Source: Leucoraja ocellata (lineage: Eukaryota). From it: a stretch of 64,000 bases of DNA. Position 1 is the stretch's first letter; every line of letters starts with the position of its first letter. The notes below the pieces were generated by a model. The model was given only the letters and a program-made list of their open reading frames with translations. It searched no databases and was not told the origin of the DNA. The position numbers were made by a program, and so were the translations under genes. Positions 19,299-63,780 of the stretch are shown in pieces. The stretch covers positions 496,001-560,000 of the forward strand of contig JAWMAR010000748.1 of assembly GCA_036785375.1 (NCBI GenBank), read 5' to 3'.

Positions 19299-19401
19299 GT
19301 AATGGCATGATATGATTCCTATGGTCTGTCACATTCCTTGGATATCCAGCAGTATAACTGCTGTTTATATGGACCATTACTTGCATTGCAGTCACTTAAG
19401 T

Positions 19402-19924
19402 GGGGTGGATGATTGCAACCAAAGATCCTATAGATAGACCAGTCCTACTAAATGCAATGGGCTGACGTGTAGTACGCAACGGAGCGGAACGTGGGCCTTT
19501 TTTTCATCAATTTCAGTAACCCGACCCGACCCGACTCGCAGTGTAACCAACGTTGCGGGGGAACAGTTTGTGTTAATAAATTATAATTCTGAAAATGAGG
19601 AGAAGATTTTTACCAAAGCACTTTTATTTTTACGAGGATGTTTCCGTAACTGGCCTCCGTCTCCGCTATGGGATCTTTGGTGCGGAGACGGAAGCCGGTT
19701 ATGGAAATGGGGCCAAACATTACCCATGAATCTGCCCATGACCATACTATGTCTTTTTCGTCGAGTGGACTATCTTGCTCGCTATAGGATCTTTGTTTGC
19801 AACCTTCACGGGGTCCGCCCTGTTTCGATGAATACAATCAACCCGGCGTGCACAATCAAATAACATCAAATAGGACAGGTTGTCCTACAACTTTAGGCTG
19901 TGCACGCCATACGCAAGAAGAAGA
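19402..19924 (+). mobile_element. HDV-ribozyme retroposon, copy 1 (interrupted by a MITE)
   Basis: TSD agtcacttaagt (19390-19401 / 19925-19936). Ribozyme split by the insertion at 19420-19795, and the catalytic C is replaced by T at 19829. Confidence 0.9.
19420..19795. mobile_element. MITE with 14-bp TIR (P-element-like or hAT-like)
   Basis: TIR CAAAGATCCTATAG / CTATAGGATCTTTG; 8-bp TSD attgcaac / tttgcaac. Confidence 0.8.
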
Positions 19925-20067
19925 AGTCACTTAAGTCTTAATGTTGATGCAGAAAAATGAAATTACTTTCTAGAGGAAAAATTAAGATTAGAAAATGTCA
20001 AGATTGAGCGTTGCTGTTCTAGCTATTTGCAAGAAATGAAGAAAAGTCTCCTTTTTCTTTGCTGCAG

Positions 20068-21510: not shown

Positions 21511-22357
21511 GAGTCTATCTTTGGTATAAACCAGCATCTGCAGTTTCTTGATTCTGAGTTTCAAATTGCTTTTGTGATCAATTATAGCTTCGTGTTTCTG
21601 CTATGCAGGAAATGTTTCATCTAATTATGATATGCAAGCAGGGTTTTTGATAAATGAGACAAGTGCAGTCCATTGTCACAGCAACTTGCGCACAAAATCC
21701 AGGCTGACACTTCAGTCAGGTAGTCTTCTTCTTGCGAATGAAACATAAACCAAAGGAATAGTTAGATCTCAAGCCGGGTGTTGAGTAGCCAGGTTGTTGT
21801 CTCTGCGTCAAAGTCAGGTAGCAAAGGAATGTTGCAACATTGGAGAAAGTGTCTTTCATCTGAAGACCTGAGACTGGAATCTGGAGTGAAAGACAAACCA
21901 GTGGAAGAACTCGTTTCCTATTGCAGGGTCTCACCCCGAAACATCGATAAAGCTTCTGCTTCCACAGATGCTGCCTGACTCACTGAGTTCCTTCAGCATT
22001 TTGCTTCTTGCTGCCTTTCAGATGACATGTTAATCCAATATCCAGCTGTTCTCTGAATGGATGGGAAAAGATCAGCTGGCAGTATTTTAAAGAGCTGTGG
22101 AGGGTAGGCTTAATGTTTTGGCCAACATTTACTGCTCAATCAACATGTTTTAAAAAAAAATAAAATAACATCATCCCTGTTGTGAGTGTTCGCTACACAG
22201 AAAATATCTGCCAGAGATTGTGCATTAGAATAGAGACAAAACTGGAAATGCTATTAGATAGACGCATAATGCTGGGGTAACTCAGCGGGACAGGCAGCAT
22301 CTCTGGATAGAAGGAATGGATGACGTTTTGGGTCGAGACCTTTCTTCAGACTGCTAA

Positions 22358-25460: not shown

Positions 25461-25927
25461 TCCACAGAGGTGGGGGTGCATGCATGGGAAATTGAGAAGA
25501 AGGGTGCCGACCCAAAACGTCACCTATTCTGTTAGATAGAAGGGTCCTGACCTGAAACTTCACCTATCCATGATGGAAGAATGGTCCCAACCGGAAACGT
25601 CACTACCCCTGTTCGGAAAAAGGGTCCTGAAGCGAAACATCACCTATCCACATTAGGAAGAAGGGTCGCAACCTAAAACCTCCTCTGTCCATGTTCTCCA
25701 GGATGCTGCCTGACCCACTGAGTTACTCCAGTATTTTGTGTCTTCGTAAACCAGCATCCGCAGTTCCTTGTTTCTTTCTACATGAGAAATTGAAATGCAG
25801 ATTATGTTTAATGAGCAAGTAAAAGAGGAAGAAGGAAGCAGAGGAAAGAAAAACAAGAATTAACTCACTTTTGACCCATTAACCTGTTAATGTTAACGTG
25901 TTCCTCTGCTCTAATGGAGATGTTGCT

Positions 25928-26690
25928 CATAAGGTCATAAGTCATAGGAGCAGAATTAGGCCATTTGGCCCATCAAGTCTACTGTGCCATTTAATCATGG
26001 CAGATCTATCTCTCCCTCCTAACCCCACTCTCCTGCCTTCTCCCTATAACCTCTGACACCTGTACTAATCAAGAATCTATTTATCTCTGTCTTAAAATCA
26101 TACATTGACTTGGTAGACAAAAATACTGGAGAAACTCAGTGGGTGCGGCAGCATCTATGGAGCGAAGGAAATAGGCAACGTTTCGGCCTGAAACGTTGCC
26201 TATTCGCTCCATAGACGCTCCATAGACGCTGCTGCACCCGCTGAGTTTCTCCAGCATTTTTGTCTACCTTCGATTTTGCAGCATTTGCAGTTCCTTCTTG
26301 AATACATTGACGTGGCATCCACAGCCTTCTGTGGCAATGAATTCCATAGATTCACCACCCTCTGACTAAAGAAATTCCTCCTCATCTCCTTCCAAAAGGA
26401 ACATCCTTTAGTTATGAGGCTATGACCTCTGTTCCTAGACTCTTCCCCCAATTGGAAACATCCTCTCCACATCCACTCTATCCTGGCCTTTCACTATTCG
26501 GTAAGCTACAATGAGGGTCCCCCTCATCCTTCTAAACTTCAGTGAGTACAGGCCCAGTGCTGTCAACTCATCGTATGTTAACCCACTTATTCCCGGGATC
26601 ATTCTCATAAACCACCTCTGGACCCTCTCCAGAGCCAGCACATCCTTCCTCAGATATGGGGCCCAAAATTGCTCACAATACTCCAAATGC
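25928..26690 (-). mobile_element. CR1 LINE 3' fragment
   Basis: HLEYCEQFWAPYLRKDVLALERVQR; (CTTATGAC)n-type tail. Confidence 0.88.
26114..26301 (+). mobile_element. Palindromic Penelope terminal-repeat insertion within CR1
   Basis: Inverted arms; TSD atacattgac(t/g)tgg. Confidence 0.82.
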
Positions 26691-26905
26691 ATAGCTGTAC
26701 ATTACTGTACATTAGGGCAGTAAGTTGCGGAGTTTCCAAATGCTAACATAATGGCAGGAGTAATTGTTGTGAAAGCCTTGGAGCCACGCGCCCTTTAGTC
26801 ATCGTGGGCGATAAGAAACTGTGTTAACTGGACGATATTTCAAAACATTTCAAATAGTTGACAAATTGTCCTTGCTTTACTATGGGTAACTCTTTTGTTT
26901 TCCAG

Positions 26906-30094: not shown

Positions 30095-30427
30095 TTGCTC
30101 TCCCACGGTTGGGGGCCTCGAGCCCTCCGTTGACGGGACAATCTTGACTCTCGTAGCCGGCGGCGTTTGGACCCTCTGCATCGGAGCGATCAGCTCTTGC
30201 ATCGGGGGGAATGTCAGCTCCCCCGCGCCATCGATCGAACCCCGGGTTGGGGCTGGTCGAGCCTCTGTGTCGTTGGAGCCTCTCGACTCGGCCTCACAAT
30301 ACTGTGGCGGCATGGTTACCAAATCAAGTCGTGTTTGTTTTTTTCTTTTTTCCAATTTTGTGAACAAAATTGATTTGGGGACGTCTGTAAAAATGGAATC
30401 CATCCATAACCCGAGGGTGGCCTGCAA

Positions 30428-33117
30428 AAAGGCAGACCAATTGAATAATTACTTTGGTCCTGTCTTCTCTAAGGAAGACATAAATAATCTGCCGGAAATA
30501 GCAGGGGACCGGGGGTCAAATGAGATGGAGGAACTGAGTGAAATCCAGGTTAGCCGGGAAGTGGTGTTGGGTAAATTGAATGGATTAAAGGCCGATAAAT
30601 CCCCAGGGCCAGATAGCCTGCATCCCAGAGTACTTAAGGAAGTAGCCCCAGAAATAGTGGATGCATTAGTGATAATTTTTCAAAACTCTTTAGATTCTGG
30701 AGTAGTTCCTGAGGATTGGAGGGTAGCTAATGTAACACCACTTTTTAAAAAGGGAGGGAGAGAGAAAACGGGGAATTACAGACCAGTTAGTCTAACGTCG
30801 GTAGTGGGGAAACTGCTAGAATCAGTTATTAAAGATTGGATAGCAGCACATTTGGAAAGTGGTGAAATCATTGGACAAAGTCAGCATGGATTTATGAAAG
30901 GTAAATCATGTCTGACGAATCTTATAGAATTTTTCGAGGATGTAACTAGTAGAGTGGATAAGGGAGAACCAGTGGATGTGTTATATCTGGACTTTCAGAA
31001 GGCTTTCGACAAGGTCCCACATAAGAGATTAGTATACAAACTTAAAGCACACGGTATTGGGGGTTCAGTATTGATGTGGATAGAGAACTGGCTGGCAGAT
31101 AGGAAGCAAAGAGTAAGAGTAAACGGGTCCTTTTCACAATGGCAGGCAGTGACTAGTGGGGTACCGCAAGGCTCAGCGCTGAGACCCCAGCTATTTACAA
31201 TATATATTAATAATTTGGACGAGGGAATTGAATGCAACATCTCCAAGTTTGCGGATGACACGAAGCTGGGGGGCAGTGTTAGCTGTGAGGAGGGTGCTAG
31301 GAGGCTGCAAGGTGACTTGGATAGGCTGGGTGAGTGGGCAAATGCATGGCAGATGCAGTATAATGTGGATAAATGTGAGGTTATCCACTTTGGTGCAAAA
31401 ACAGGAAAGTAGACTATTATCTGAATGGTGGCCGATTGGGAAAGGAGAAGATGCAGTGAGACCTGGGTGTCATGGTACACCAGTCATTGAAAGTAGGCAT
31501 GCAGGTGCAGCAGGCAGTGAAGAAGGCGAATGGTATGTTAGCATTCATTTTTTTTGGTTTTTTTTTGTTTATTTTATTAGAAGTTAATACATCACAAAAC
31601 AGTACAGTGGCACCTAATTTTAGGTGCCAACTATGTAATAACGTAATCCATTCTATGTACAACCTCTAGTTTTATGTTATAAGAAAGAAGTAAGCAGAAC
31701 AAGAAAAAGAAAGCAATAGAAAGGGGAAAAAGTGGAGAAATAGATGGTAGAGAGTAGAAAAACGTGAAGTGTGTATATAAAAAATAAAAAAAGGAAGAGA
31801 GAAAGAGGAAAGTAGAAATAGAAGAGAAGGCCCCTTAAAAGAGAATTTTTCAAATCTGTATTCGGAGATGTAGCTCTATCCGCGTCATGAACTGAAATCA
31901 GCAATCCTTACGGCACCGCTGCATCACATGATTCCAAAAAGTCGATGAAAGGAGACCAACTCTTTAAGAATTGGACATATTTATCTATTAGTCGGAGTCT
32001 CATTTCTTCAAGGCGTGCTATGTCCATCATATTCCTAATCCACATTTTAACAGTTGGTGTGGTTGTATTTTTCCAAAATTTAAGTATCAATTTCTTTCCA
32101 ATTATTAACCCATAATTAAAAAAAACATTTTAATCTTTATTTAAATTGGTATCTTCTCCTATTATTCCAAATATAATCCATTTCGTTTTGGGTTCTATTC
32201 TTGACTTGAAAATCTTTGTAAATATATCAAATATATCACTCCAAAATTTATTCAACTTTGTACATCCAACAAATGAGTGTGTTATATTAGCGTTTTGAAA
32301 CAAACATTTATCGCATCTGGGAGAGACGTTTGGATAAAATTTATTCAACCTCGTTTTTGAATAATATAGTCTATGTAATAATTTGAATTGAATTAAATTA
32401 TGTCTTGCATTAATAGAACAGTTATGTGTATTCATCAAATATTTTTCCCATCTAAGTGCGAATGGTATGTTAGCATTCATAGCAAAAGGATTTGAGTATA
32501 GGAGCAGGGAGGTTCTACTGCAGTTGTACAGGGTCTTGGTGAGACCACACCTGGACTATTGCGTACAGTTTTGGTCTCCTAATCTGAGGAAAGACATTCT
32601 TGCCATAGAGGGAGTACAGAGAAGGTTCACCAGACTGATTCCTGGGATGTCAGGACTTTCATATGAAGAAAGACTGGATAGACTCGGCTTGTACTCGCTA
32701 GAATTTAGAAGATTGAGGGGGGATCTTATAGAAACTTACAAAATTCTTAAGGGGTTGGACAGGCTAGATGCAGGAAGATTGTTCCCGATGTTGGGGAAGT
32801 CCAGGACAAGGGGTCTCAGTTTAAGGATAAGGGGGAAATCTGTTAGGACCGAGATGAGGAAAACATTTTTTCACACAGAGAGTGGTTAATCTGTGGAATT
32901 CTCTGCCACAGAAGGTAGTTGAGGCCAGTTCATTGGCTATATTTAAGAGGGGGTTAGATGTGGCCCTTGTGGCTAAAGGGATCAGGGGGTATGGAGAGAA
33001 GGCAGGTACAGGATACTAAGTTGGGTGATCAGCCACTATCATATTGAATGGCGGTGCAGGCTCGAAGGGCCGAATGGCCTACTCCTGCACCTATTTTTCT
33101 ATGTTTCTATGTTTCTA
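30428..33117 (+). mobile_element. CR1 (HER1-like) LINE, 5'-truncated, interrupted by L1
   Basis: RT motifs in ORF 30144-31412 ([35 protein letters not shown]), C-terminus in ORF 32467-32889, (TTCTATGT)n tail. Confidence 0.95.
31549..32457 (-). mobile_element. L1-clade LINE 3' fragment
   Basis: Cys-rich C-terminus (QFKLLHRLYY...CDKC...HSFVGC...FW), poly(A) tail, 23-bp TSD gcgaatggtatgttagcattcat (31526-31548 / 32458-32480). Confidence 0.92.
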
Positions 33118-38212: not shown

Positions 38213-38385
38213 TGACTGTCTGACTGTGAGATGCTGACTGTGAGATGCTGACTGTGAGATGCTGACTGTGAGATGCTGACTGTGAGATGCTGACTGTGAG
38301 ACGCTGACTGTCTGAGACGCTGACTGTCTGAGACGCTGACTGTCTGAGATGCTGACTGTCTGACTGTGAGATGCTGATTGTCTGT
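38213..38385. repeat. Minisatellite, 14-bp unit GCTGACTGTGAGAT with 16-bp variants
   Basis: About 11-12 tandem units visible directly. Confidence 0.95.
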
Positions 38386-39191
38386 GTCTGTGTTGCAGTT
38401 TGGACAAGATGGAGTGTCTGGCCTGCTTGCTGCTGTGTGATCCTAAGTAACGTTAAGCTTGTGCTGCCATATGGTGTCACCACATGAAGTGAATCGCACC
38501 ACCCAGAGGGCAGATAATGTGCCCCTCTGCATTTTCCATGTTGCTGTTGGGTGACACATGTGATGCTGCAGTTAGTCACACTCCCTCACAGCCCCACAAC
38601 AAGAACGCTTCAATCCTGACCTCTGGTGCTCACAGCATGTTGAGTCTGCATCTTCTCCCCATGACGGCGTGGGTCAGCCCTGGCTGTTCCGATTTCCAAC
38701 CACATCCCAAAGACTGTTAGTAGGGTAGACACAAAACACTGCAGTAACTCGCCGAGTGAGGCAGCATCCCTGGAGAACCCGGGCAGGTGACGTTTCAGGT
38801 CACGACCCTGCTTCCATGTTTCTATTGCTAGTAGATGAATTGGCCACATCAAATTTCTGCTCGTGTAGGTAAAAAGTAAATGAATCAAATGGGTGTTGAT
38901 GAGCTTGGGAGAGATTAATTGCAGGGTTTTAGGGGAATAACTACTAACTCCATCTATCTCCAGTCCTTTCCCACCTCAGTCATTCTATCTCCCTACTCCC
39001 ATTGGGCAGAAGCTTGAAAGCGCATACCACACCAGCTTCTTCCCCCTCTGTTATCAGGCTTCTAGATGGTCCATCCATAAGCTAGGGTACTGTCCGATTC
39101 TCCTCTAGCCCATTGCGGACATTGGACTTTGTCTCTGGAGCTGATGCATTATAACGCTGAGAAAGGTAACTTTCCCTACACTCCACCTATT

Positions 39192-39328
39192 CTTCTTCTT
39201 GCGTATGACGTGCACGGCCTAAATTTGTGGACAACCTGTTCTATTTGATCTTATTTGATTGTGCACGCCGGGTTGATTGCATCCGTCGAAACAGGGCGGA
39301 CCACGTGAAGGTTGCAATCTCCCACCCC
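39192..39328 (-). mobile_element. HDV-ribozyme retroposon, copy 2
   Basis: Full-length reverse-complement copy with perfect TSD cactccacctatt (39179-39191 / 39329-39341), inserted in a Rex1-like 3' fragment. Confidence 0.9.
39275..39328 (-). ncRNA. Minimal HDV-like ribozyme (predicted)
   Basis: GGGGUGG GA GAUUGCA ACC UUCACGU GGU CCGCCCU GU UUCGA C GGA UGCAAUC: all stems intact, J4/2 CGGA instead of CGAA. Confidence 0.8.
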
Positions 39329-40692
39329 CACTCCACCTATTGTACTTGAGTTTGGCTTCATTTGTCTTTATGTGTAGAGTTATCTGGGCTGACTGGACAG
39401 CAAGCACAACAAACCTATTCACAGTACCTCAGTACATGTGACAATAATAAATCTAAACCTAAGAGTGGGAACGGGACTGAGGAGAGTTGGTTTTGGGTGC
39501 TGACCTACTGCGTACTAGTACGTGAATTAGTTGAGTTTAAACAAGGAGCATTTTTCATCATTAATTAAACCACAAAATGAGGCAAGTAAAAAAGGACTTG
39601 AGTTCTGTAGTCAGGTAACATGTCAGCACAGTGTTTTAACTCACTTTTTGGGATCTGGACATAGCTGGCAAGACCTATGTTACTTTCCCAGCCTCAGTAG
39701 CCCTTGATAGTTGTTGGTGAGCAGTTCTGGTAAAGGGGCTTCCTCACTGTTAGTGTAGGGAGTTCCAAGATTTAGCTACGATTGTGCCTGTAATCGCTGG
39801 AGTTTAGAAGGATGAGAGGACCTCATTGGAACTTACCAAATAGTGAAAGGCCTGGATACAGTGGATGTGGGAAGGTTGTTTCCACTAGAGTCATACAGCG
39901 TGGAAACAGGCTCTTTGGCCCAACATGCCCACACCGCCCAACATGTCCAATCTACACTAGTCCCACCTGCCTGTGTTTGGCCCATATCCATCTAAACCTG
40001 TCCTACCCATGTACCTGTCTAAATGTTAAATGTTGCAATAGTACCTGCCTCAACTACCTCCTCCGGCAGCTTGATCTCTACACCCACCACTCTTTGTGTG
40101 ATAAAGTTACTCCTCAGATTCCTATTAAATCTTTTCACCCTCACCTTAAACCTATGTCCTCTCATCCTCGATTCCTCTACTCTGGGCAAGAGACCCTGTA
40201 CATCTACCCGATCTAATTCTCTCATGATTTTGAACATATAAGATCACCCCTCATCATCCTGCACTCCAAGGAATAGAGTACTAGTCTGCGCAACCTCTCC
40301 CTATAGATCAGGCCCTCGGGCCCTGGCAACATCCTCGTAGATCTTCTCTGCACCCTGGTCTACCTTCGATTTAAACCAGCATCTGCAGTTCTTTCCAACA
40401 CATTTTGTCCGCGCCAATGCGAAATCTCCTCACGGTATGTCGACTTTGAAGAAGTTCTCTTCCTCTCAACATGAACGGTCTCAACCTGAAACATCACCCA
40501 TCCCTTCTCTCCAGAGATGCTGCCTGACCCGCTGAGTTATCCAGCATTTTGTGTCTATCTTCTCTGCACCCTTTACAGCTTGACAATATCTTTCCTTTAA
40601 CATGGTGCCCAGAAATGAACACAATACTCTAAATATTTCCTCGCCGATGTCACATACAACTGCAACATGACCTCCCAACTTCTATACTCAAT

Positions 40693-40878: not shown

Positions 40879-41968
40879 AATGGAATTGGGGCTCAACACC
40901 TCCCTGTGTGCCTGGGTCCTGGACTTTCTCACCGCCAGGCCCCAGGTAGTCAAGATGGGAGGGAATACATCGGAGTCCCTCACCCTGAGCACAGGATCGC
41001 CCCAGGGTTGCGTCCTCAGCCCCCTATTGTACTCCCTGTACACACATGATTGTGGCTAGGTTCAGCTCCAATTCAATAATTAAGTTTGCTGATGACACTG
41101 TGGTGGTGGGCCTGATCTCAGACAATGATGAGAAGGCCTACCGGGAGGAGGTGGCTGATCTAGCACTCTGGTGCCAGGATAACAGCCTCCTCCTGAACGT
41201 CAAAAAAACGAAGGAGCTGATCATGGACTTTAGGAGGGCACATCATCCGAGGACGTACACTCCATTGAGGATAAATGGGGATCCTGTGGATAGGGTGAGC
41301 TGCTTTAAATATCTGGGAGTCCACATCTCTGAGGATATGACATGGTCATCACACGCCTCCGCACTGGTGAGTAAGGCAAGGCAGCGCCTTTACCACCTCA
41401 GGCAATTGAGGAAATTCAGAGTGTCTCCGAGGATCCTCCAGTGCTTCTACGCAGCGGCGGTGGAAAGCATCTTGTCCGGGAACATTACCATCTGGAATTG
41501 CTCTGCCAAGGACAAGAAGGCTCTGCAGAGAGTAGTGCGTTCGGCCGAACGCACTATGGGAACTTCACTCACCCCCCTGCAGGAACTATGCAACAGGAGG
41601 TGCAACTCCAGAGCAAACAAAATCATGGGAGACCCCCTGCTCCCCTGCAACGGTCTGTTCCAGCTGCTACGGTCAGGCAAACGCCTCCGTTGCCATGCTG
41701 TGAGAACAGTGAGGTTGAGAAGGATTTTCTTCCCAGAGGCAATTCGGACTGTAAACGCCTATCTCACCAGGGACTAACTCTACAGAACGTTTTTCCTTCC
41801 ATTCTTTATTATGAAAAAGAATATGTGTGTTAAGATTGTGTTTATAATTTGTTTGGTTGTTTTGTTGTTTGTCTTTTGCTCAAAAGTCCGCAAGCATTGC
41901 CACTTTCATTTCACTGCACATCTCGTATGTGTATGTGACAAATAAACTCGACTTGACTTGACTTGACT
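40879..41968 (+). mobile_element. Rex1/Babar-clade LINE 3' fragment
   Basis: PQGCVLSP-type motif, IIKFADDTVVVGLI, LNVKKTKELIMDFRR, KARQRLYHLRQL; hairpin + AATAAA + (GACTT)n tail. Confidence 0.9.
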
Positions 41969-45383: not shown

Positions 45384-45650
45384 AAAAAGGTTTTCCTTTA
45401 AAACCATCCAGATAGTTTGAAATATTTAGTTGGCTGTTCAGAGAGCTCATTAAATGTTTAGTTAGTGGTTTTAATATGATTAAGTGGGACCTGTCTGAAG
45501 AAGGGTCTTGACCCGAAACGTCACCCATTCCTTCTCTTCAGAGATGCTGCCTGTCCTGCTGAGTTACTCCCAACATTTTGTGTCTACCTTCGATTTAAAC
45601 CAGCATCTGCAGTTCTTTCCGACATATTAAGTAGAATCATGGCTCTTTGT

Positions 45651-45704
45651 GGGGTGGGAGATTGCAACCTTCACGTGGTCCGCCCTGTTTCGACGAATAC
45701 AATC
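45651..45704 (+). ncRNA. Minimal HDV-like self-cleaving ribozyme (predicted)
   Basis: P1 GGGGUGG/CCGCCCU, P2 GAUUGCA/UaCAAUC (one mismatch here), P3 ACC/GGU, L3 UUCACGU, 1-bp P1.1, J4/2 CGAA with catalytic C at 45694. Confidence 0.8.
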
Positions 45705-45791
45705 AACCCGGTGTGCACAATGAAATAAGATCAAATAGAACAAGTTGTCCTACAACTTTAGGCTGTGCACGCTGTACGCAAGAAGAAGAAG
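45651..45791 (+). mobile_element. ~140-nt retroposon with 5' HDV-like ribozyme and (GAA)n tail, copy 3
   Basis: Starts GGGGTGGGAGATTGCAACC, ends ...TACGC(AAG)n. Imperfect 12-bp TSD atggctctttgt / atgtttctttgt. Four homologous copies in the window. Confidence 0.9.
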
Positions 45792-45955
45792 ATGTTTCTT
45801 TGTGGTGATACAAAACTGCAGATGCTGGAATCTGGAGTAAAAAACAAACTGCTGAACATGTGTGGAGCAAAAGGACGATGGGTACTTTGCCTCCATAGAT
45901 GCTGCTTGACCTGCTCAGTTCCTCAGATAGACACAAAATGCTGGAGAAACTCATG

Positions 45956-48916: not shown

Positions 48917-49224
48917 GTGAGGGGGAGGGGGGGAGGGGAGAGGGAGAGGGGTGGACATGGAGCAGAGGGAGGGGAGAGTGGGGGGGAGGGAGTGAGGGGG
49001 GGAGAGAGGGGGGGGGCAGTGAGGTGGGGGGGGGACATGGAGCAGAGGGAGGAGGGAGGGGAGGGGGAGGAGAGGGGCAGAGTGGGGGGGGGGGGAGAGG
49101 GAGAGGGAGGAGAGAGGGGGGAGAGTGATGGGGAGAGAGGAGGGAGGGGGGAGTGGGGTAGGGGGACATTGAGCAGAGGGAGGGACTGGGGGGGGAGAGG
49201 AGAGGAGGGGGAGAGGAGGGGAGG

Positions 49225-49424
49225 NNNNNNNNNNNNNNNNNNNNNNNNNNNNNNNNNNNNNNNNNNNNNNNNNNNNNNNNNNNNNNNNNNNNNNNNNNNN
49301 NNNNNNNNNNNNNNNNNNNNNNNNNNNNNNNNNNNNNNNNNNNNNNNNNNNNNNNNNNNNNNNNNNNNNNNNNNNNNNNNNNNNNNNNNNNNNNNNNNNN
49401 NNNNNNNNNNNNNNNNNNNNNNNN
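49225..49424. other. Assembly gap (200 N)
   Basis: Run of N preceded by G/A-rich low-complexity sequence (48921-49224). Confidence 0.99.
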
Positions 49425-50393
49425 CTGTTTCCGTTCTGTATCTCTAAACTAAACAAAGTTAAAAAACGAAACCTGGCCCCATCCATCTATTTCTCCCCCA
49501 TCTGATTCCAGCTATCATCCAGCAACCTGTGTTCCACCCTCCTAGGTGCTGCTTCACATTGGTCATCTTTCCCACCCTCTCCCAGCCCTGATCAAGATTA
49601 ACACTCGCCTTTTGTCTGAACAGAGGCTATTTATTCAGCGTTCTGTTTTTTGTGGCAGTGCAAACTGTTCTCGAAAAAGAAGAATCCGTGCCTATTTTGC
49701 CCCCTTGTTCCTACTGGGCGTTTCCAGTGTTATTAAGAAGCAGGTTTCAGGGCAACACGCCTTCTTATTCTTGTTGAGCAGCTGGAGGGGCTGTGTGAAC
49801 TATATCTTGTCAATGGAGAATACACAAAAGGACAATAGGCATGGAAAGAAGCAGCGGAAATTAGGAAACTATTCACTTGTAATACTTGGCCAACTTTCAA
49901 AGCCTCCATTTAGCTCTAATTCAATGGAGTATTTCGGTCATGTTTAAGTTAGTGGTTGCATTGATTTATAGTAGGTTGGATATCTGACTATTGGCAGTTA
50001 AAGTTATCAAAACACATTATTGGAGCAGACAAAACAGTCACGTAATCTCTTTAAAAGTCAACAGTAATTTGTATAATTCGCAGACTGTAAGGTAATATTT
50101 CTTGAGTGTCTTAAATTTCTGGTAAAACAAAACTTAAATTAGTGTGCCCTTTTTGTAGAGGATCGTGTAAAATTATCATAGATCCAGTCCTATGCGTAAC
50201 AGCACCGAATATTATATCTGCCAAATAGGCTTTCCATCCAACGGTTGAAATATCTGTTGTCCTATTGTTACTCCATTCAGCGTGGCCATTCCAAACTGGG
50301 CGTTAGGTACCTGTTATTCCTCTTTCCCATCCACTCTCATACACACTAGAGCCCATCGGCAGAGGCAGATTGACCTACATACCATTCTGAATC

Positions 50394-50533
50394 TTCTTCT
50401 TCTTGCGTATGGTGTGCACAGCCTAAAGTTCTAGGACAACTTGTTCTATTTGATCTTATTTGATTGTGTATGCCGGGTTGATTGCATTCGTCGAAACACG
50501 GCGGACCACATGAAGGTTGCAATCTCCCACCCC
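50394..50533 (-). mobile_element. HDV-ribozyme retroposon, copy 4
   Basis: Full-length; TSD accattctgaatc / accatgctgaatc. Ribozyme at 50480-50533 has one P1 mismatch and one L3 change, with CGAA and P2 intact. Confidence 0.9.
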
Positions 50534-57178: not shown

Positions 57179-60100
57179 GTAAGACTGCTAGCACATGATG
57201 TGGACGTACCCATAGAAGCATTTGCCCGACAGATCCGATGCTAAAGATGCTGGAGTAACTCAACATGTCAGGCGGCATCTCTGGAAACCATGGATAGGTG
57301 ACGTTTTGGGTCAGGACCCTTCTTCAGGCTGATTAGCTGAGTAACTCCAGCACCTTGGTCCTTTTGTGTAAAGCAGCATTTTCAAGTACTTTTTGCTACA
57401 GGTTCAAGGTGGAAGCTGCCTCCCAAGCAGTATCATCTTTCTGTGCCAAATCACAAAATGCTGGAGTAACTTAGTGGGTCGGGCAGCATCTGGGGAGGGA
57501 AAGGATATGCGATGTTTCAGGTTAGGACTTTTCTTCAGACTGATTTTAGTAGGGGGGAGAAAGCAGGAGAATAAAGTTGGTGGCGGGACAAAGGCTGAAT
57601 TGCTAGGTGGATAGACACAAAATGCTGGGTTAACACAGCGGTTCAAGCAGTATCTCGAGAGAAAAGAAATAGGTGACATCTTGGGCCGAAAGCCTTCTCT
57701 GTACGGGGCAGACTCGGTGGGTGCAAGGGCTCTGTATCTCTAAACTAAACTAAACTAAAGACGCTGCCTGACCCACTAAGTTACTCCAGCTCTTTGTGTT
57801 CTTTTGTGTAAACCGGCACCTGCAGTTCCTTGCTTCTGAATCGTAACAAAGCCTGAAGGCTACGGGGGAGCAGCACATGCGTAGACTAGTTCTTTGTCTG
57901 GGTATCGACAAAGGCACAATTCACCCCAGCCACTGGCTAGTGATTGAGGTGGCAACGTGGGCTGGCACCAGTTCTCTTCCTGACTCTGGCAGTCAGAGTT
58001 GAGTTGCAGCATCTGTGTTGCAGCTAAGTTCGCACAAGCCAGGAATCTAGCTAGTAACTTTCTATTTGTATGGCTCGATGAAAGTAGTGCATTTACCCAC
58101 TGGAACAGAATGGCAAGTTTTATATTCCTCTGGCACTTAAATAATAGTTATCAAAATATTCAAAAAATGCAGGTCTAGTTTCAATGAATATGATGAAAGG
58201 TGGAGGAATTGAGAGGACCAGAGGATGCACAGGAGCATCGATCAGCCATGATCATACAGTATCAGTTGATGGGACATACTTGCGGGGCAACCTGCCTATC
58301 CTGCTCCTATTTCTTGTGTTTAGTTTAGTTTGGTTTAGAGATACAGCGTGGAAATAGGCCCTTCAGCCCACCGAAGGTAGACCCAAAGTGTTGGTGATAT
58401 TTCGGGTCGGAGCCCTTCTTCATACCCACTGAGCTCACCGAGCACGCTGGCCATCGATCACCTGTTCACACTAGTTCCATGTTATCCCACTTTCTCATCC
58501 ACTCCCAACACACTAGGCCGATGAACCTACAAACCTTTGGGATGTGGGAGGAAACCAGAGCACCTGGAGGAAACCCACGCAGTCATATGAAAACTCCAGA
58601 CAGATAGCACCCAGGGTCAGCATCAAACCCATTGAACTCTGGCGCTGTGAGGCAGCAGCTATACCCGCTGCACCACTGTGCTGCCCTTCGAAGTTTTCTT
58701 TACTCACAAGAAGATGTTGGATGCCTGAAATCATTATGCTTTGCTGCGGGTTCTCTGTTCAGCAAGTAATATTTGGCCCTGGATTAATTAAAGTGGTGAT
58801 TGGACACTAGTTTGGGCAAGTCTGGGGTATGTTGTAGATTGTGGACTAGAGATTCAAGCTCTGTGTAAGAAAGAACTGCAGATGCTGGTTTAATGCCGGC
58901 CCTGCAGTCTACGGTGCTTCTGGCTGTGGCGGAGACTTTAAATCTCGACTGCCGGCCTGCGGCCTACAACAACTTAAAGCCGCAGCCTCCGGTGAAGAAG
59001 AGCCGATCCTGGACTGACTCTGGACTCTGGTCCTGTCCACGGGGGGGAAATGGAGGAGGACTGGCCAAATTTGTTTTTTTTGTGCCTTCCACCACAGTGA
59101 TGAATGCTGTGGTGGATGTTTGTGTTACATTCTTATTGTGGTTGTGTGTTCTTTATTATTGTACCGCTGCTGACAACCCAAAATTCCACCGACCCTGGTT
59201 GTGTGGTAATAAATTCTATCTAAATTCTATCTAAATCGGAGGTGATGCACCCGCTGAGTTATTCCAGCATTTTGTGTCTACCTTCGATTCAAACCAGCAT
59301 CTGCAGTTCTTTCTTACACAAAGAGCTTGAATTTCTAGTCCACAATCTGCATCATACATATCTGGAGAAAGGGAATGGGCGACGTTTCGGGTCGAGACCC
59401 TTCTTCAGACTGATTCAGAGATTCAACCTCGCTGTGTGCATGAACAGCCCAAGCTCAATAACAGGTGCATCTTGAACTCTGTTTTTGAAATTCTATTCTA
59501 TTGATGTTCACTGAAGTGGAATTCAACATGAAACAGAGGATGAGATTCTGTCCAAGTAATTATTGGTTTTCAGGTTATAGCCATGATAGGCTTTACTTAA
59601 TGAGTATGCTTGACTCGCATGCTTTCTGTTATTAGACTGTTCCAGAGTTCGACTTGTAGTCTCGGTTAAATTACCTAAACTTGGGTGTACAATGAGCCTC
59701 CATCTGTACCACGGTACTGACTGGCCTGTTCTTGTGAATAGAGCGTGGGATATGGGAGGAAACTAGAGCACCCGGAGGTAACCCACGCAATCACAGGGAG
59801 ACCAGTGTTAATATCCATTTTGTACATTCTACCCATTAACTCTAGTTCTATATTCCACTTTTGCATCCTCTCCCTATACATGACCGGCATTAAAAAAAAA
59901 AAGATGAATTAGCCGACAAACGCGCGTGTCCTTTGGGATGTGGGAGGAAACTGGAGCACCAAGGGGAAACCCACACGGTCACAGGGAGAACGTGCAAACT
60001 CCACACACAGATAGCACCGGGTCAGGATCAAACCCGGGTCGCTAGCGCTGTGAAGCAGCAGCCCTACCGGCTGTGCCACTGTACCGTCCTGAAAGCCCAC

Positions 60101-61439: not shown

Positions 61440-63780
61440 TCTAACCAAGTTTACCAATGACGTGAAAATAGGTGGAAGGGCTTACTATGGTGAGAATATT
61501 GTGATTCTGCACCGGATATGGATAGATTGAGTGGGTGAAAACTTAGTAAATGGAGTTTAATGTGTGAAAGCGCAAGGTGGTGCACTTCAGTCCAGGCCGT
61601 CCCTGGGTTAGGAACACTCAAAGTACAGATACCACTTACAAACAAGCTTCCATTATGTCAAATTCAAAACTCCGCTACACGGACATACATCTGTTGCTAT
61701 GAACGGCAGAACTAGCCTCACTCTCTCACTCCGCTTTTAGTAATTGTTCTTATCATTAAGCTGGAAAGAGAGAAGATTGGCAAGGATGCTGTCAAGGGAT
61801 TGAGTTATAGGGGGAGGTTAGTCAGGCTCAGACTTTATTCCTTGGGGTGCAGGAGGCTGAGTGATCTTTTAGAAGTGTATACAATCATGAGGGGAATAGA
61901 TAGGTTGAATGCACAGAGTCTTTTTCCCACAGTAGGGGAATCAAGAACCAGAGGGCATAGGTTTAAGGTGAGAGTTGCAACATTTAATAGGAATCTGAGG
62001 GGCAACTTTTCAACTCAGATGGTGGTGTATATGTGGAATGAGCAGCCAGAGTAGGTAGTGGAGGCAGGTATTATAACAACAATTAAAAGACACTTGGACA
62101 AGTACATTTGTTAGGACAAGGGTGAAGGGCTATGGGCCAAACACAGGAAATGAGACCAGCTTAGATGGGCCACTTGGTCGGATGGACAAATTAGGTTGTT
62201 TGACGTTATGGCTCTGTCTAAGACCCTCTCTTCTGTCCGTGCTTTTGATGCTATTCACTACATTACTGTGGAGGTACTGTATGGATACCACATCGACTGA
62301 TTTTGTGTGTTTTCCGACTTATGGAAATACCCGACTTAAGAACATCTGTAAAAGCAGAGCGTGCCGAGCTCTGGGTACAATCTGTAAGAGGAACTGAAAG
62401 GCAGATTATTATCGACACTTGCAATACAGTGCGCCAGAGATGCTTCCTGGCAGAGGAAGAGTGCGGGAGCGGTGTGCTTGTACATCTGTTCACACGTCCA
62501 GGAGGGGGGCCAGCTGTGACTGCCAACCCAACAGACAGCATGATGCCATATTCAGATCGCGTTGCCCCACACTATTGACTTGCCTGGGATAGCCAGCATG
62601 GTTATGTGTGTGACAGGTCGTGCCTCACTAACTTGAGAGAGTGACAAAGCAGATTGATGAAATGGATGTTGTATACATGGATTTTAGTCATACTTTAAGT
62701 AAGGACCCTCTTGGTAGGCTGATCCAGAAGATTAAGATGTATGGGATTCACAAAGATTTGGTTGTATGGATCCAGAACCGGCTTAGTCATAGAAGACAGA
62801 GTGTTGTGGTGGAACGTAAACGTTCTGGTTGGAGGTTTGTGACCAGTGGAGTTACGCAGGGATCTGTGCTGGGACCTCTGCTGTTTGCCATATATACAAA
62901 TGACCTAGGCATTGTACATGTAAATGGGTTTGTGAGTAAGTTTGGTGATAATGCCAACATTGAGGAGTTGCAGACAGTGATGAATGCTGTCAGAAGAAAC
63001 AGTGGGATATTGATCAGCTGCAAAACTAGGCAGAGAAATGACAATGGAGTTTAACCCAAGCAAGTGTGAGGTGTTGCACTTTGAGAAGTTGAATGTGTGT
63101 AGTTAATGGCATTGATGTGCAGAGAGGGATCTTGGAGTCCAGGTTCATAGCTCACTGAAGTTGCCAGCACTAGTAATTAGGGTGGATCAGAAGGCTTGCC
63201 TTCATTGCTAGGGCCATTGAATATAATGGTCAGGAAGTCACAATGCTGCTCTGAAGGACTTTGGTTAGGCCACGTTTGGGGAATTGCATGCAGTTCTGTC
63301 CACATTGTCCCATTACAGGAACGATGTGGAGACTTTGGAGAGGGTACAGAGGAGGTTTACCAGACCGCTGCCTGGATTAGAGGGTCTCAGCTACAGGGAG
63401 AGGTTGGATAGACTTGGATTAGAACATCAGAGCTTAATGGAAGTATATACAATTTTGAGCAGCATAGATAGGGTAGACAGTCAGAACCATTTCCCCAGGG
63501 TGGTAATGACCAACACTAGACGGCATAGCTATAAGGTGAAAGGGGGAAAGTTTGATGGAAATGTACGAAGCAGATTTTTTACACAGAGTGGTGGGGGCTT
63601 GGACCACATTGCCACGAGTGGTGGTGGAGGCAGATATGTTAATGGCATTTGAGAAGCTTTTAGATAGGCACATAGAGGTATAGGGAGTGGAGGGATATGG
63701 ATCATGTACAGGCAAATGAGATTAGTTTAGCTAGGCATCATGTTGGACACAAACATTGCAGGCATGTTCCCATTCTATGT
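61440..63780 (+). mobile_element. Cluster of degenerate CR1 fragments
   Basis: DVVYMDFS, SGVTQGSVLGPLLF, LERVQRRFTR motifs with frameshifts; non-CR1 spacer ~62200-62580. Confidence 0.75.

What the first reader, a model, noticed from the sequence alone, without database searches (positions are those of the whole stretch)
39179..39341. Element 5' boundary equals the predicted cleavage site in all four copies; 12-13 bp TSDs suggest an Ingi/Vingi-type non-autonomous retroposon
Seen: copies at 19402(+), 39328(-), 45651(+) and 50533(-) all begin at the same G1, directly next to a 12-13 bp TSD, and end in a -TACGC(AAG)n tail. None is 5'-truncated and no tRNA-type A/B box is evident. Established: Ingi-clade elements (L1Tc/ingi and their short derivatives NARTc, RIME, SIDER) carry a 5' HDV-like ribozyme and make ~12-bp TSDs. 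As I recall, the L1Tc P3/L3 reads ACC-UCAACGU-GGU, close to ACC-UUCACGU-GGU here. Inference: a promoter-less ~140-nt element that cuts itself out of host read-through transcripts and is copied by an Ingi/Vingi LINE. Four copies in 64 kb imply a very large family if this density is typical. This copy has a perfect TSD and intact stems.
Basis: partly seen in the sequence, partly recalled or inferred. Interest (0 to 1): 0.85.

Follow-up and report, generated by a model that had tools for sequence, protein, structure and literature searches.

The report
Ribozyme-headed 137-nt retroposon family
A very abundant 137-141-base mobile element in this vertebrate genome begins exactly at a minimal HDV-like self-cleaving ribozyme fold, and RNA libraries show transcripts starting at that very base, but which LINE copies it remains unknown.

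Summary
The window has 4 of 4 full-length copies of a 137-141-nt element: 39328-39192(-), 45651-45791(+), 50533-50393(-) and 19402-19926(+). The last is split by a nested 376-bp inverted-repeat transposon. All start at the same G1, end in ACGC(AAG)3-4, and carry 10-13-bp target-site duplications.

Bases 1-54 fit a P4-less HDV-like ribozyme: P1 with G1.U, P2, P3, P1.1 and a CGAA J4/2. A strict descriptor finds 0.1 such sites per shuffled window.

New evidence comes from laid reads:
- The family reaches millions of summed word-depth, against about 35-55 for single-copy flanks.
- DNA contigs lose similarity exactly at G1.
- In two RNA libraries with different template-switch oligos, the oligo abuts G1 (1263 and 207 reads). 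RNA 5' ends therefore lie at G1.

No assay shows cleavage. The 4 copies give no covariation, and Rfam gives only a sub-threshold hit.

The Ingi/Vingi attribution is untested. No partner LINE was found, and RTE is an equally good candidate.

The scan's first readers noted the same element on at least five other pieces of this genome.

Verdict: a real element, and a new variant of a known kind, the ribozyme-headed non-autonomous LINE derivative.

The parts
39329..39341 (-). upstream copy of the 13-bp target-site duplication
   Evidence: Read directly. Identical to 39191-39179.
39275..39328 (-). element positions 1-54: minimal (P4-less) HDV-like ribozyme fold, with the predicted cleavage 5' of G1 at 39328
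   Evidence: Pairing table in 4 copies. Descriptor scan against 40 shuffles. Sub-threshold Rfam RF02682 match that starts at 39328. Template-switch oligo joined at G1 in RNA reads.
39322..39328 (-). P1 5' strand (positions 1-7), pairing with 39293-39299 (positions 30-36). G1.U36 wobble at the cleavage site.
   Evidence: 7 of 7 pairs in 3 of 4 copies; one mismatch in copy 50533.
39313..39319 (-). P2 5' strand (positions 10-16), pairing with 39275-39281 (positions 48-54)
   Evidence: 7 of 7 pairs in copies 39328 and 50533; a C.A mismatch in the other two.
39300..39312 (-). P3 (positions 17-19 with 27-29) enclosing the 7-nt L3 (positions 20-26). L3 positions 23-24 pair with 37-38 as P1.1.
   Evidence: P3 and P1.1 are paired in 4 of 4 copies.
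39282..39285 (-). J4/2 (positions 44-47) with the predicted catalytic C44. CGGA in this copy, CGAA in the family majority.
   Evidence: At 39283, 98-99.8% of laid reads and contig depth carry the other letter, which gives A46 (table 3).
39207..39269 (-). 3' domain: a long-range stem (positions 60-68 with about 114-122) around an A-rich loop and a small hairpin (39224-39235). Presumed recognition site for the partner reverse transcriptase.
   Evidence: Minimum-free-energy folds of three copies. 91.7% and 90.0% of cells paired. The function is inferred.
39192..39206 (-). 3' end: ATACGC followed by (AAG)3
   Evidence: The same end occurs in 4 of 4 copies, with (AAG)4 in the other three.
39179..39191 (-). 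downstream copy of the 13-bp target-site duplication
45651..45791 (+). second full-length copy, with 12-bp duplications at 45639-45650 and 45792-45803 (2 mismatches)
50393..50533 (-). third full-length copy, with 12-13-bp duplications at 50546-50534 and 50393-50381 (1 mismatch)
19402..19926 (+). fourth full-length copy, interrupted at 19421-19796 by a nested inverted-repeat transposon. Duplications at 19390-19401 and 19925-19936.

Best explanation
This is a copy of a very abundant, 137-141-nt non-autonomous non-LTR retroposon built from two modules.

Module 1 (bases 1-54) folds as a minimal, P4-less HDV-like ribozyme. When the element is transcribed as part of any longer host transcript, the ribozyme cuts immediately 5' of G1. 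The element RNA then gets a precise 5' end and needs no promoter of its own.

Module 2 (about bases 60-126, plus ACGC(AAG)n) is a stem enclosing a small hairpin, followed by a short microsatellite tail. A partner LINE reverse transcriptase recognises it and primes on a nicked target by target-primed reverse transcription. Staggered nicks give 10-13-bp duplications, and the first 1-2 bases of each duplication can also be read as tail. Because the cDNA runs to G1, every new copy carries the whole ribozyme again, which explains the absence of 5' truncation.

Shown here: the anatomy, the duplications, the abundance, and RNA 5' ends at G1.
Inferred: that the 5' ends come from self-cleavage, the role of the 3' stem, and the existence and clade of the partner LINE. 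RTE or Vingi/Ingi are the leading candidates.
For: - 4 of 4 window copies are full length, share G1 and the ACGC(AAG)3-4 end, and carry duplications.
- The fold has P1 of 7 bp with G1.U36, P2 of 7 bp, P3 of 3 bp, a 7-nt L3, P1.1 of 2 bp, and J4/2 = C-G-A-A next to P2. The family majority has A46.
- A strict descriptor hits 39328(-) plus one unrelated site. In 40 dinucleotide shuffles of the window it hits 0.1 sites on average over both strands.
- The Rfam HDV-F-prausnitzii model aligns end to end (model positions 1-74) starting at 39328.
- 93.5% of cells are paired, against 29-50% when partners are slid by 1-3 columns.
- Loose ends just beyond G1 read as the reverse complement of a template-switch oligo: 1263 reads in the single-cell run (agreement 0.88) and 207 in the bulk oligo-dT run. 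The two oligos differ. Reads with unrelated flanks number 542 and 760. The oligos were identified in a paper passage.
- 244 and 267 DNA contigs diverge exactly at 39328.
- Summed word-depth on the element is 2.6-4.1 million, against 35-55 on single-copy flanks.
- Such 5'+3' LINE derivatives with 5' ribozymes are described for RTE, Ingi and R2.
Against: - No biochemical cleavage test was done.
- No pair has changes on both sides, so there is no covariation.
- Nested minimum-free-energy z-scores are not better than shuffles: +0.61, +1.35, -0.54, +1.30, -0.06.
- Rfam finds nothing at gathering score. The only permissive hit is 14.5 bits, E = 2.6, and its alignment uses a different P4/P2 register.
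- The reads tool's own table of places where many molecules begin or end lists none (table 6). The 5'-end evidence rests on loose ends that carry the oligo.
- Template switching marks any RNA 5' end, so an internal promoter starting at G1 would look the same.
- Many reads run through G1 (542 and 760).
- This particular copy has G instead of A at J4/2 position 46. The other three copies each carry one or two changes in the ribozyme.
- No partner LINE was found.
Confidence: 0.75

Rival explanations
1. The G1 RNA ends come from transcription initiation at an internal promoter in the head, by Pol III or Pol II. L1Tc is the model: the same first 77 nt act as both promoter and ribozyme. The HDV-like fold would then be inactive or only an accessory.
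For: Template switching reports any 5' end, so one search does not discriminate. The abstract of PMC3383444 (search listing) states that the L1Tc 77-nt head is both a promoter and an HDV-like ribozyme. In the single-cell run, reads on the element's sense strand outnumber antisense about 4:1 (1992 vs 487 in the bin 39260-39303).
Against: No tRNA-like head and no Rfam small-RNA family. Reading by eye, I found no acceptable A or B box; the nearest is TTTCGA at positions 38-43, one base off the recalled B-box core. A complete HDV-like fold starting exactly at base 1 is very unlikely by chance. The neighbouring unrelated repeats show comparable strand biases, so the 4:1 bias is not specific (table 2).
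Confidence: 0.15
2. One reading: the partner is an Ingi/Vingi-clade LINE and the head descends from the Ingi-type ribozyme.
For: Ingi is one of the clades reported to carry 5' ribozymes and to make 5'+3' non-autonomous derivatives. Vingi occurs in vertebrates, and template RNAs used with Vingi-1 carry both cognate UTRs (review passages).
Against: Nothing here tests it. The P3/L3 motif is shared with a bacterial HDV-like family consensus. The trypanosomatid ribozymes named in the passages read carry lengths of 78-126 nt and are drawn with a P4, unlike this 54-nt P4-less fold. RTE is named alongside Ingi for the same behaviour. The claim of a 12-bp duplication as an Ingi hallmark could not be checked: '12 bp' occurs 0 times in PMC4035085, and the Vingi paper is not held.
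Confidence: 0.3
3. The HDV-like fold is a coincidence. The element is an ordinary short LINE-dependent retroposon whose 5' end is set some other way.
For: No covariation. Non-significant folding energies. Sub-threshold Rfam score.
Against: The descriptor rate is 0.1 per 128,000 positions in shuffles, yet the hit starts at the element's first base. J4/2 reads CGAA in the family majority. RNA ends lie at G1 in two libraries.
Confidence: 0.05

Closest known systems
Bipartite non-autonomous LINEs and short internally deleted elements with a 5' HDV-like ribozyme (R2 SIDEs, NARTc/RIME/SIDER of L1Tc/ingi, RTE derivatives)
   Same: A LINE-type 3' end joined to a 5' end that is a self-cleaving ribozyme. 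The copies are not 5'-truncated. The ribozyme releases the RNA from co-transcripts. Sources: Kojima 2018 passage; abstracts of PMC3414825 and PMC4035085 in the search listing.
   Different: This element is only 137-141 nt, sits in a jawed vertebrate, and has a P4-less 54-nt ribozyme and an (AAG)n tail. Its parent LINE is unknown, so descent by internal deletion is not shown.
Minimal HDV-like ribozymes (drz-Mtgn type; theta ribozymes of gut phages)
   Same: A nested double pseudoknot without the P4 domain, with the catalytic C as the first base of J4/2 (passages of 10.1101/2023.06.13.544163).
   Different: Those come from metagenomes and phages, next to tRNA genes. This one heads a eukaryotic retroposon. 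No sequence comparison with them was made here.
L1Tc ribozyme / Pr77 hallmark of trypanosomatid L1Tc/ingi elements
   Same: An HDV-like ribozyme at the first base of a LINE and of its short derivatives.
   Different: Pr77 is 77 nt or more, has a P4, and doubles as a promoter. No sequence or model match to it was tested, because Rfam offered none.
Rfam RF02682, HDV ribozyme from F. prausnitzii
   Same: The only Rfam family that aligns. The alignment covers model positions 1-74, starts at G1, and shares P1, ACC-7 nt-GGU P3/L3 and the 3' strand of P1.
   Different: The score is 14.5 bits against a gathering score of 44, with E = 2.6. The alignment places P4 and the 3' strand of P2 further downstream than the 54-nt fold.

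Membership tests
HDV-like (delta-like) self-cleaving ribozymes | Nested double-pseudoknot order: P1, P2, P3, L3, P3', P1', P1.1, (P4), J4/2, P2' | tested here: met
   All helices lie in the required order. 93.5% of cells are paired over 4 copies, against 29-50% in slid controls. The descriptor rate in shuffles is 0.1 per window.
HDV-like (delta-like) self-cleaving ribozymes | Cleavage site directly 5' of the first P1 base, closed by a G.U wobble (feature recalled, not taken from a call) | tested here: met
   G1.U36 is present in the 3 of 3 copies that have letters in both columns. G1 is the first base of the element in 4 of 4 copies.
HDV-like (delta-like) self-cleaving ribozymes | Catalytic cytosine as the first base of J4/2 | tested here: met
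   C44 is present in 3 of 4 copies and is T in copy 19402, a CpG-type change. The position rule comes from a passage of the theta-ribozyme preprint.
HDV-like (delta-like) self-cleaving ribozymes | Site-specific self-scission that is lost when the catalytic C is changed to U | not testable with these tools
   There is only indirect support: RNA 5' ends at G1 in two libraries.
HDV-like (delta-like) self-cleaving ribozymes | Match to a curated covariance model at its gathering score | tested here: not met
   No match at gathering scores. The best permissive match is RF02682 at 14.5 bits against 44. The class is defined by structure and varies in sequence (passage), so this lowers the claim only a little.
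Minimal (P4-less) HDV-like ribozymes | No P4 domain between P1.1 and J4/2 | tested here: met
   Only 5 bases (positions 39-43) lie between P1.1 and C44. An alternative register with a 3-bp P4 exists in the Rfam alignment, but it loses the CGAA junction.
Non-autonomous non-LTR retroposon mobilised by target-primed reverse transcription | Dispersed copies flanked by target-site duplications, with a defined 3' tail and no coding capacity | tested here: met
   4 of 4 copies have 10-13-bp duplications and an (AAG)3-4 tail. The element is 137-141 nt long.
Non-autonomous non-LTR retroposon mobilised by target-primed reverse transcription | 3' end shared with an autonomous LINE of the same genome | tested here: inconclusive
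   No LINE in the window shares it. The CR1-like LINE in the window ends in a different 7-8-nt repeat. The rest of the genome could not be searched.
Ingi/Vingi-derived element | Head and tail homologous to an Ingi/Vingi LINE; partner reverse transcriptase in that clade | not tested
   No Ingi/Vingi sequence was available to compare, and no partner was found.
Classical SINE | Head derived from tRNA, 7SL, 5S or snRNA, with an internal Pol III promoter | tested here: not met
   ARAGORN finds 0 tRNA-like genes in the window. Rfam finds 0 families at gathering scores.

The most novel reading that the evidence does not exclude
Tens of thousands of copies of a P4-less, 54-nt HDV-like ribozyme are scattered through a jawed-vertebrate genome, and many are active in vivo. 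Any host transcript that carries a sense copy is then cut at G1. This would be a genome-wide source of transcript truncation. It would also be the first biological role for a 'minimal' HDV-like ribozyme in a eukaryote. The 137-nt element would be a natural minimal two-module template (54-nt head plus about 80-nt tail) for trans-mobilisation by a LINE.
Probability: 0.45. Interest if true: 0.7.

Novelty: new variant of a known kind. Interest (0 to 1): 0.55.

Why it matters
Ribozyme-headed LINE derivatives are known from insects and trypanosomatids. The searches run here found no description of one in a jawed vertebrate, nor of a P4-less HDV-like ribozyme heading a eukaryotic mobile element. Those searches were made, and they cover only open-access PMC papers and bioRxiv. 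Repbase and subscription papers were not searchable.

If the ribozyme is active, three things follow:
- This genome would hold a very large set of natural sequence variants of one minimal ribozyme, useful for structure-function work.
- Sense insertions would cut host transcripts.
- The element would define the smallest natural RNA that a LINE accepts with both a 5' and a 3' module. Template RNAs used with RTE-1 and Vingi-1 carry both cognate UTRs (review passage).

The public RNA libraries already show 5' ends at G1, so the question can be tested directly.

Tried and rejected
Partner LINE
- blastn of the element (word size 7, E up to 10) and a covariance model with filters off found nothing in the window beyond the 4 copies.
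- The only other (AAG)3 end, at 21725-21733(-), has no similarity to the element.
- The reverse-transcriptase fragments in the window are CR1-like. The CR1 3' end carries a different 7-8-nt repeat, so I rejected CR1 as the partner.
- Exact-pattern scans for the head found 0 matches in the metagenome, prokaryote-genome and viral collections. A scan for the 3' hairpin found 0 in metagenomes.
- Scan notes searched by words gave no note of a long element with this head. The search by sequence was blank.

Alternative fold
- The Rfam alignment implies a 3-bp P4 (positions 44-46 with 58-60) and a P2 3' strand at positions 64-72.
- I rejected it in favour of the 54-nt fold, because that fold gives a perfect 7-bp P2 and a CGAA junction in the family majority.

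Covariation and thermodynamics
- The 4 copies are too few and too similar to give covariation. No pair changed on both sides.
- The thermodynamic z-scores were uninformative, because the folding program cannot model the pseudoknot.

Strand invasion by the template-switch oligo
- I considered this as an artefact and rejected it. The read consensus has the oligo's three G followed by all four G of the element, 7 G in total.
- Invasion at the element's own G run would give fewer G, and the upstream flanks differ between copies.
- Individual reads were not visible, only consensus lines.

Empty sites
- The joints that skip 183-202 bases around the element are other copies of the surrounding repeats with unknown letters between. 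They are not clean empty sites.
- The contigs that cross the 5' junction have only 24-25 letters inside the element, below the tool's 31-letter rule. I make no claim about presence or absence in the related organisms.

Papers
- Ruminski 2011 and Kojima 2011 are not held. What I say of them is recalled, or taken from citing passages.
- Supplements were not opened.
Full report
**What is in the sequence**

On the minus strand, 39341-39179 reads as follows:
- a 13-bp direct repeat (39341-39329);
- a 137-nt element that starts GGGGTGGGAG at 39328 and ends ATACGC(AAG)3 at 39192;
- the same 13 bp again (39191-39179).

blastn of this element against the window finds three more copies at 91-92% identity: 45651-45788(+), 50533-50396(-) and a split copy. 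In the split copy, positions 1-19 lie at 19402-19420 and positions 12-137 at 19797-19923.

The split is a nested 376-bp element at 19421-19796. It has terminal inverted repeats and an 8-bp duplication of element positions 12-19. The fourth copy is therefore also full length.

A covariance model of the whole element, run without filters over both strands, scores the four copies at 156-182 bits. Nothing else scores above 10.5 bits (E = 1.8). So 4 of 4 copies are full length, and there are no truncated or older fragments in 64 kb.

The duplications are 13, 12, 12-13 and 10-12 bp, with 0, 2, 1 and 0 mismatches. Their first one or two bases can also be read as tail. Each copy differs from the four-copy majority at 4-7 positions, and 0-3 of these are CpG-type transitions. 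The window has CpG observed/expected of 0.49 and 45% G+C.

**The fold**

In all four copies the first 54 bases can be written as an HDV-like nested double pseudoknot:
- P1: positions 1-7 with 30-36, closed by G1.U36.
- P2: positions 10-16 with 48-54.
- P3: positions 17-19 with 27-29, around a 7-nt L3.
- P1.1: positions 23-24 with 37-38.
- Five unpaired bases where P4 would be.
- J4/2: positions 44-47, directly before the P2 3' strand.

J4/2 reads CGAA in two copies, CGGA in the copy of the finding and TGAA in copy 19402. Laid reads show that 98-99.8% of the family carries A at position 46, so CGAA is the family state (table 3, place 39283).

According to a passage of the theta-ribozyme preprint, minimal HDV-like ribozymes lack P4 and the catalytic C is the first base of J4/2. 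That matches C44 here.

A strict descriptor required G1, a 7-bp P1, a 6-8-bp P2, a 3-bp P3, a 6-8-nt L3, and a C four bases before the P2 3' strand. It hits 39328(-) and one unrelated site, 58686(-), which lies in a repeat with tRNA-like stems. In 40 dinucleotide-preserving shuffles of the window it hits 0.1 sites on average over both strands. A hit that begins at the very first base of a mobile element is therefore not chance.

Over the four copies 93.5% of cells are paired, against 29-50% when the partners are slid by 1-3 columns.

**Evidence against the fold**
- No pair shows a change on both sides.
- Nested folding energies are no better than shuffles, with z from -0.54 to +1.35.
- Rfam finds nothing at gathering scores.
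- In permissive mode only RF02682, a bacterial HDV-like family, matches, at 14.5 bits with E = 2.6. That alignment does cover the whole model and starts at 39328.

That alignment also shows that the ACC-7 nt-GGU P3/L3 is shared with a bacterial family.

**The 3' half**

Folds of three copies give a long-range stem, positions 60-68 with about 114-122. It encloses an A-rich stretch and a 5-7-bp hairpin, and ATACGC and the (AAG) tail follow. I take this to be the site a partner reverse transcriptase recognises. That is inference.

**Reads**

One call laid two RNA runs (raw reads) and two DNA runs (contigs) on 38600-39900, at 88% likeness.

1. Abundance. Summed word-depth on the element is 4.1 and 2.6 million in the bin 39260-39303. 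Single-copy flanks (39480-39743) give about 55 and 36. The tool warns that this is not a copy number. As an order of magnitude it points to 10^4-10^5 copy equivalents, in line with 4 copies per 64 kb.
2. The 5' boundary. 244 and 267 DNA contigs run on into unrelated sequence exactly behind 39328 (agreement 0.34-0.35). Depth does not fall towards the 5' end. Only the best-supported 24 of 1,477 loose-end rows were shown, so this is partial support for homogeneous 5' ends.
3. RNA ends. In the single-cell run, 1263 reads continue beyond 39329 with a consensus (agreement 0.88) whose reverse complement is a template-switch oligo ending GAATGG. In the bulk oligo-dT run, 207 reads continue with the reverse complement of a different oligo ending ACATGG.

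A methods passage gives both oligos and names them: the Drop-seq TSO primer and the Smart-seq2 template-switching oligo. Both end in three G.

Base 39329 happens to be G on the element strand. The reads therefore spell the oligo's three G followed by the element's own four G. That is what template switching at an RNA whose first base is G1 should give.

Reads with unrelated flanks at the same boundary number 542 and 760. Among the rows shown, no other place in the stretch has an oligo-like loose end.

The tool's own table of molecule starts and ends lists none. That fits, because these reads do not stop at G1 but run on into the oligo.

In the single-cell run, reads on the element's sense strand outnumber antisense about 4:1. 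The neighbouring repeats show similar biases, so I give this no weight.

**What this means**

Sense-strand RNAs that begin at G1 exist in two independent libraries, alongside read-through transcripts. Partial self-cleavage predicts exactly this. But template switching cannot distinguish a 5'-OH from a triphosphate or a cap.

An internal promoter that starts at G1 therefore remains a live rival. L1Tc combines both functions in one 77-nt head (abstract in the search listing).

Against a classical SINE promoter: no tRNA-like sequence, no Rfam small-RNA family, and by eye no acceptable A or B box.

**Partner LINE**

None was found.
- The reverse-transcriptase fragments in the window are CR1-like.
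- The CR1 3' end carries a different repeat.
- Head and tail patterns have no exact match in the metagenome, prokaryote-genome or viral collections.

[quoted passage not shown] R2 is specific to rDNA, and the four insertion sites here are unrelated to each other. RTE and Ingi/Vingi are therefore the candidates, and I cannot choose between them.

The trypanosomatid ribozymes named in the passages I read carry lengths of 78-126 nt in their names and are drawn with a P4, unlike this one.

**Host**

The closest named relatives of the CR1 reverse transcriptase are from cartilaginous fishes: Hypanus sabinus at 85% and 71%, and Callorhinchus milii at 67-72%. This is a lead only. Organism names of the runs were coded.

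**Novelty**

The kind is known: a ribozyme-headed, non-autonomous LINE derivative. The searches run here surfaced no description of three features of this one:
- a P4-less 54-nt ribozyme as the head;
- a total length of 137-141 nt;
- a jawed-vertebrate host with a family of this size.

For example, 2 papers hold both 'HDV-like' and 'shark', and neither title or abstract shown in the listing concerns a retroposon of this kind; I did not open either paper. These searches cover open PMC papers and bioRxiv only. Repbase and subscription journals were not searchable, so prior description cannot be excluded.

First readers of this scan noted the same element on at least five other pieces of this genome. 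Those notes are unchecked and I did not count them as evidence.

Noticed in passing
window 19421-19796: A 376-bp element with terminal inverted repeats of about 14-16 bp, plus a third internal copy of the repeat at 19666-19681. It is flanked by an 8-bp duplication and sits inside retroposon copy 19402. It looks like a MITE of a cut-and-paste transposon; an 8-bp duplication would fit hAT, which I recall rather than tested.
   Followed up: partly
window 58640-58686 (-): The only other hit of my HDV-like descriptor. It lies in a repeat whose sequence has tRNA-like stems and is probably the head of a tRNA-derived SINE. I took it as a chance hit. ARAGORN does not call it a tRNA.
   Followed up: partly
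window 30144-31412 (+); 26200-26692 (-) with 3' end near 25927-25946; 62591-63082 (+); 40889-41777 (+): CR1-like LINE fragments. One is a 422-aa open frame with an RVT_1 domain (E = 4.5e-32). Another is a C-terminal fragment followed by a 7-8-nt tail repeat. The nearest named relatives are in cartilaginous fishes.
   Followed up: partly
window 38732-38819, 39040-39171, 39392-39479, 39788-39900: Four other very high-copy repeats flank the finding, with summed word-depth of 10^5-10^6 against about 35-55 for single-copy sequence. The retroposon copy sits in a patchwork of repeats.
   Followed up: no
window 39257: A 2-base deletion variant of the retroposon appears in RNA reads of both RNA runs (62 of 1275 and 212 of 2166). 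It has depth 0 in the contigs of the two DNA runs. It may be a subfamily specific to the RNA runs' organism, or a variant that the contigs dropped.
   Followed up: no
window 39329 onwards (family-wide flanks): The consensus of unrelated flanks just upstream of G1 is A-rich on the + strand, so T-rich in element orientation, in DNA contigs and RNA reads alike (agreement 0.34-0.42). This may reflect an AT-rich target preference.
   Followed up: no
window 21725-21733 (-): A fifth (AAG)3 run, preceded by TTCGC, with no other similarity to the retroposon.
   Followed up: partly
window 38220-38359: A tandem array of a 14-bp unit, 9.6 copies at 95% match.
   Followed up: no
window 48921-49224, next to the N run 49225-49424: A G/A-rich low-complexity array of several overlapping periods that runs up to the assembly gap.
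   Followed up: no
element positions 47-88 of each copy (e.g. window 39282-39241, -): An ATG that overlaps the end of J4/2 and the P2 3' strand opens a 13-codon frame. In a parent LINE this could be the start of the first ORF. This is speculation.
   Followed up: no
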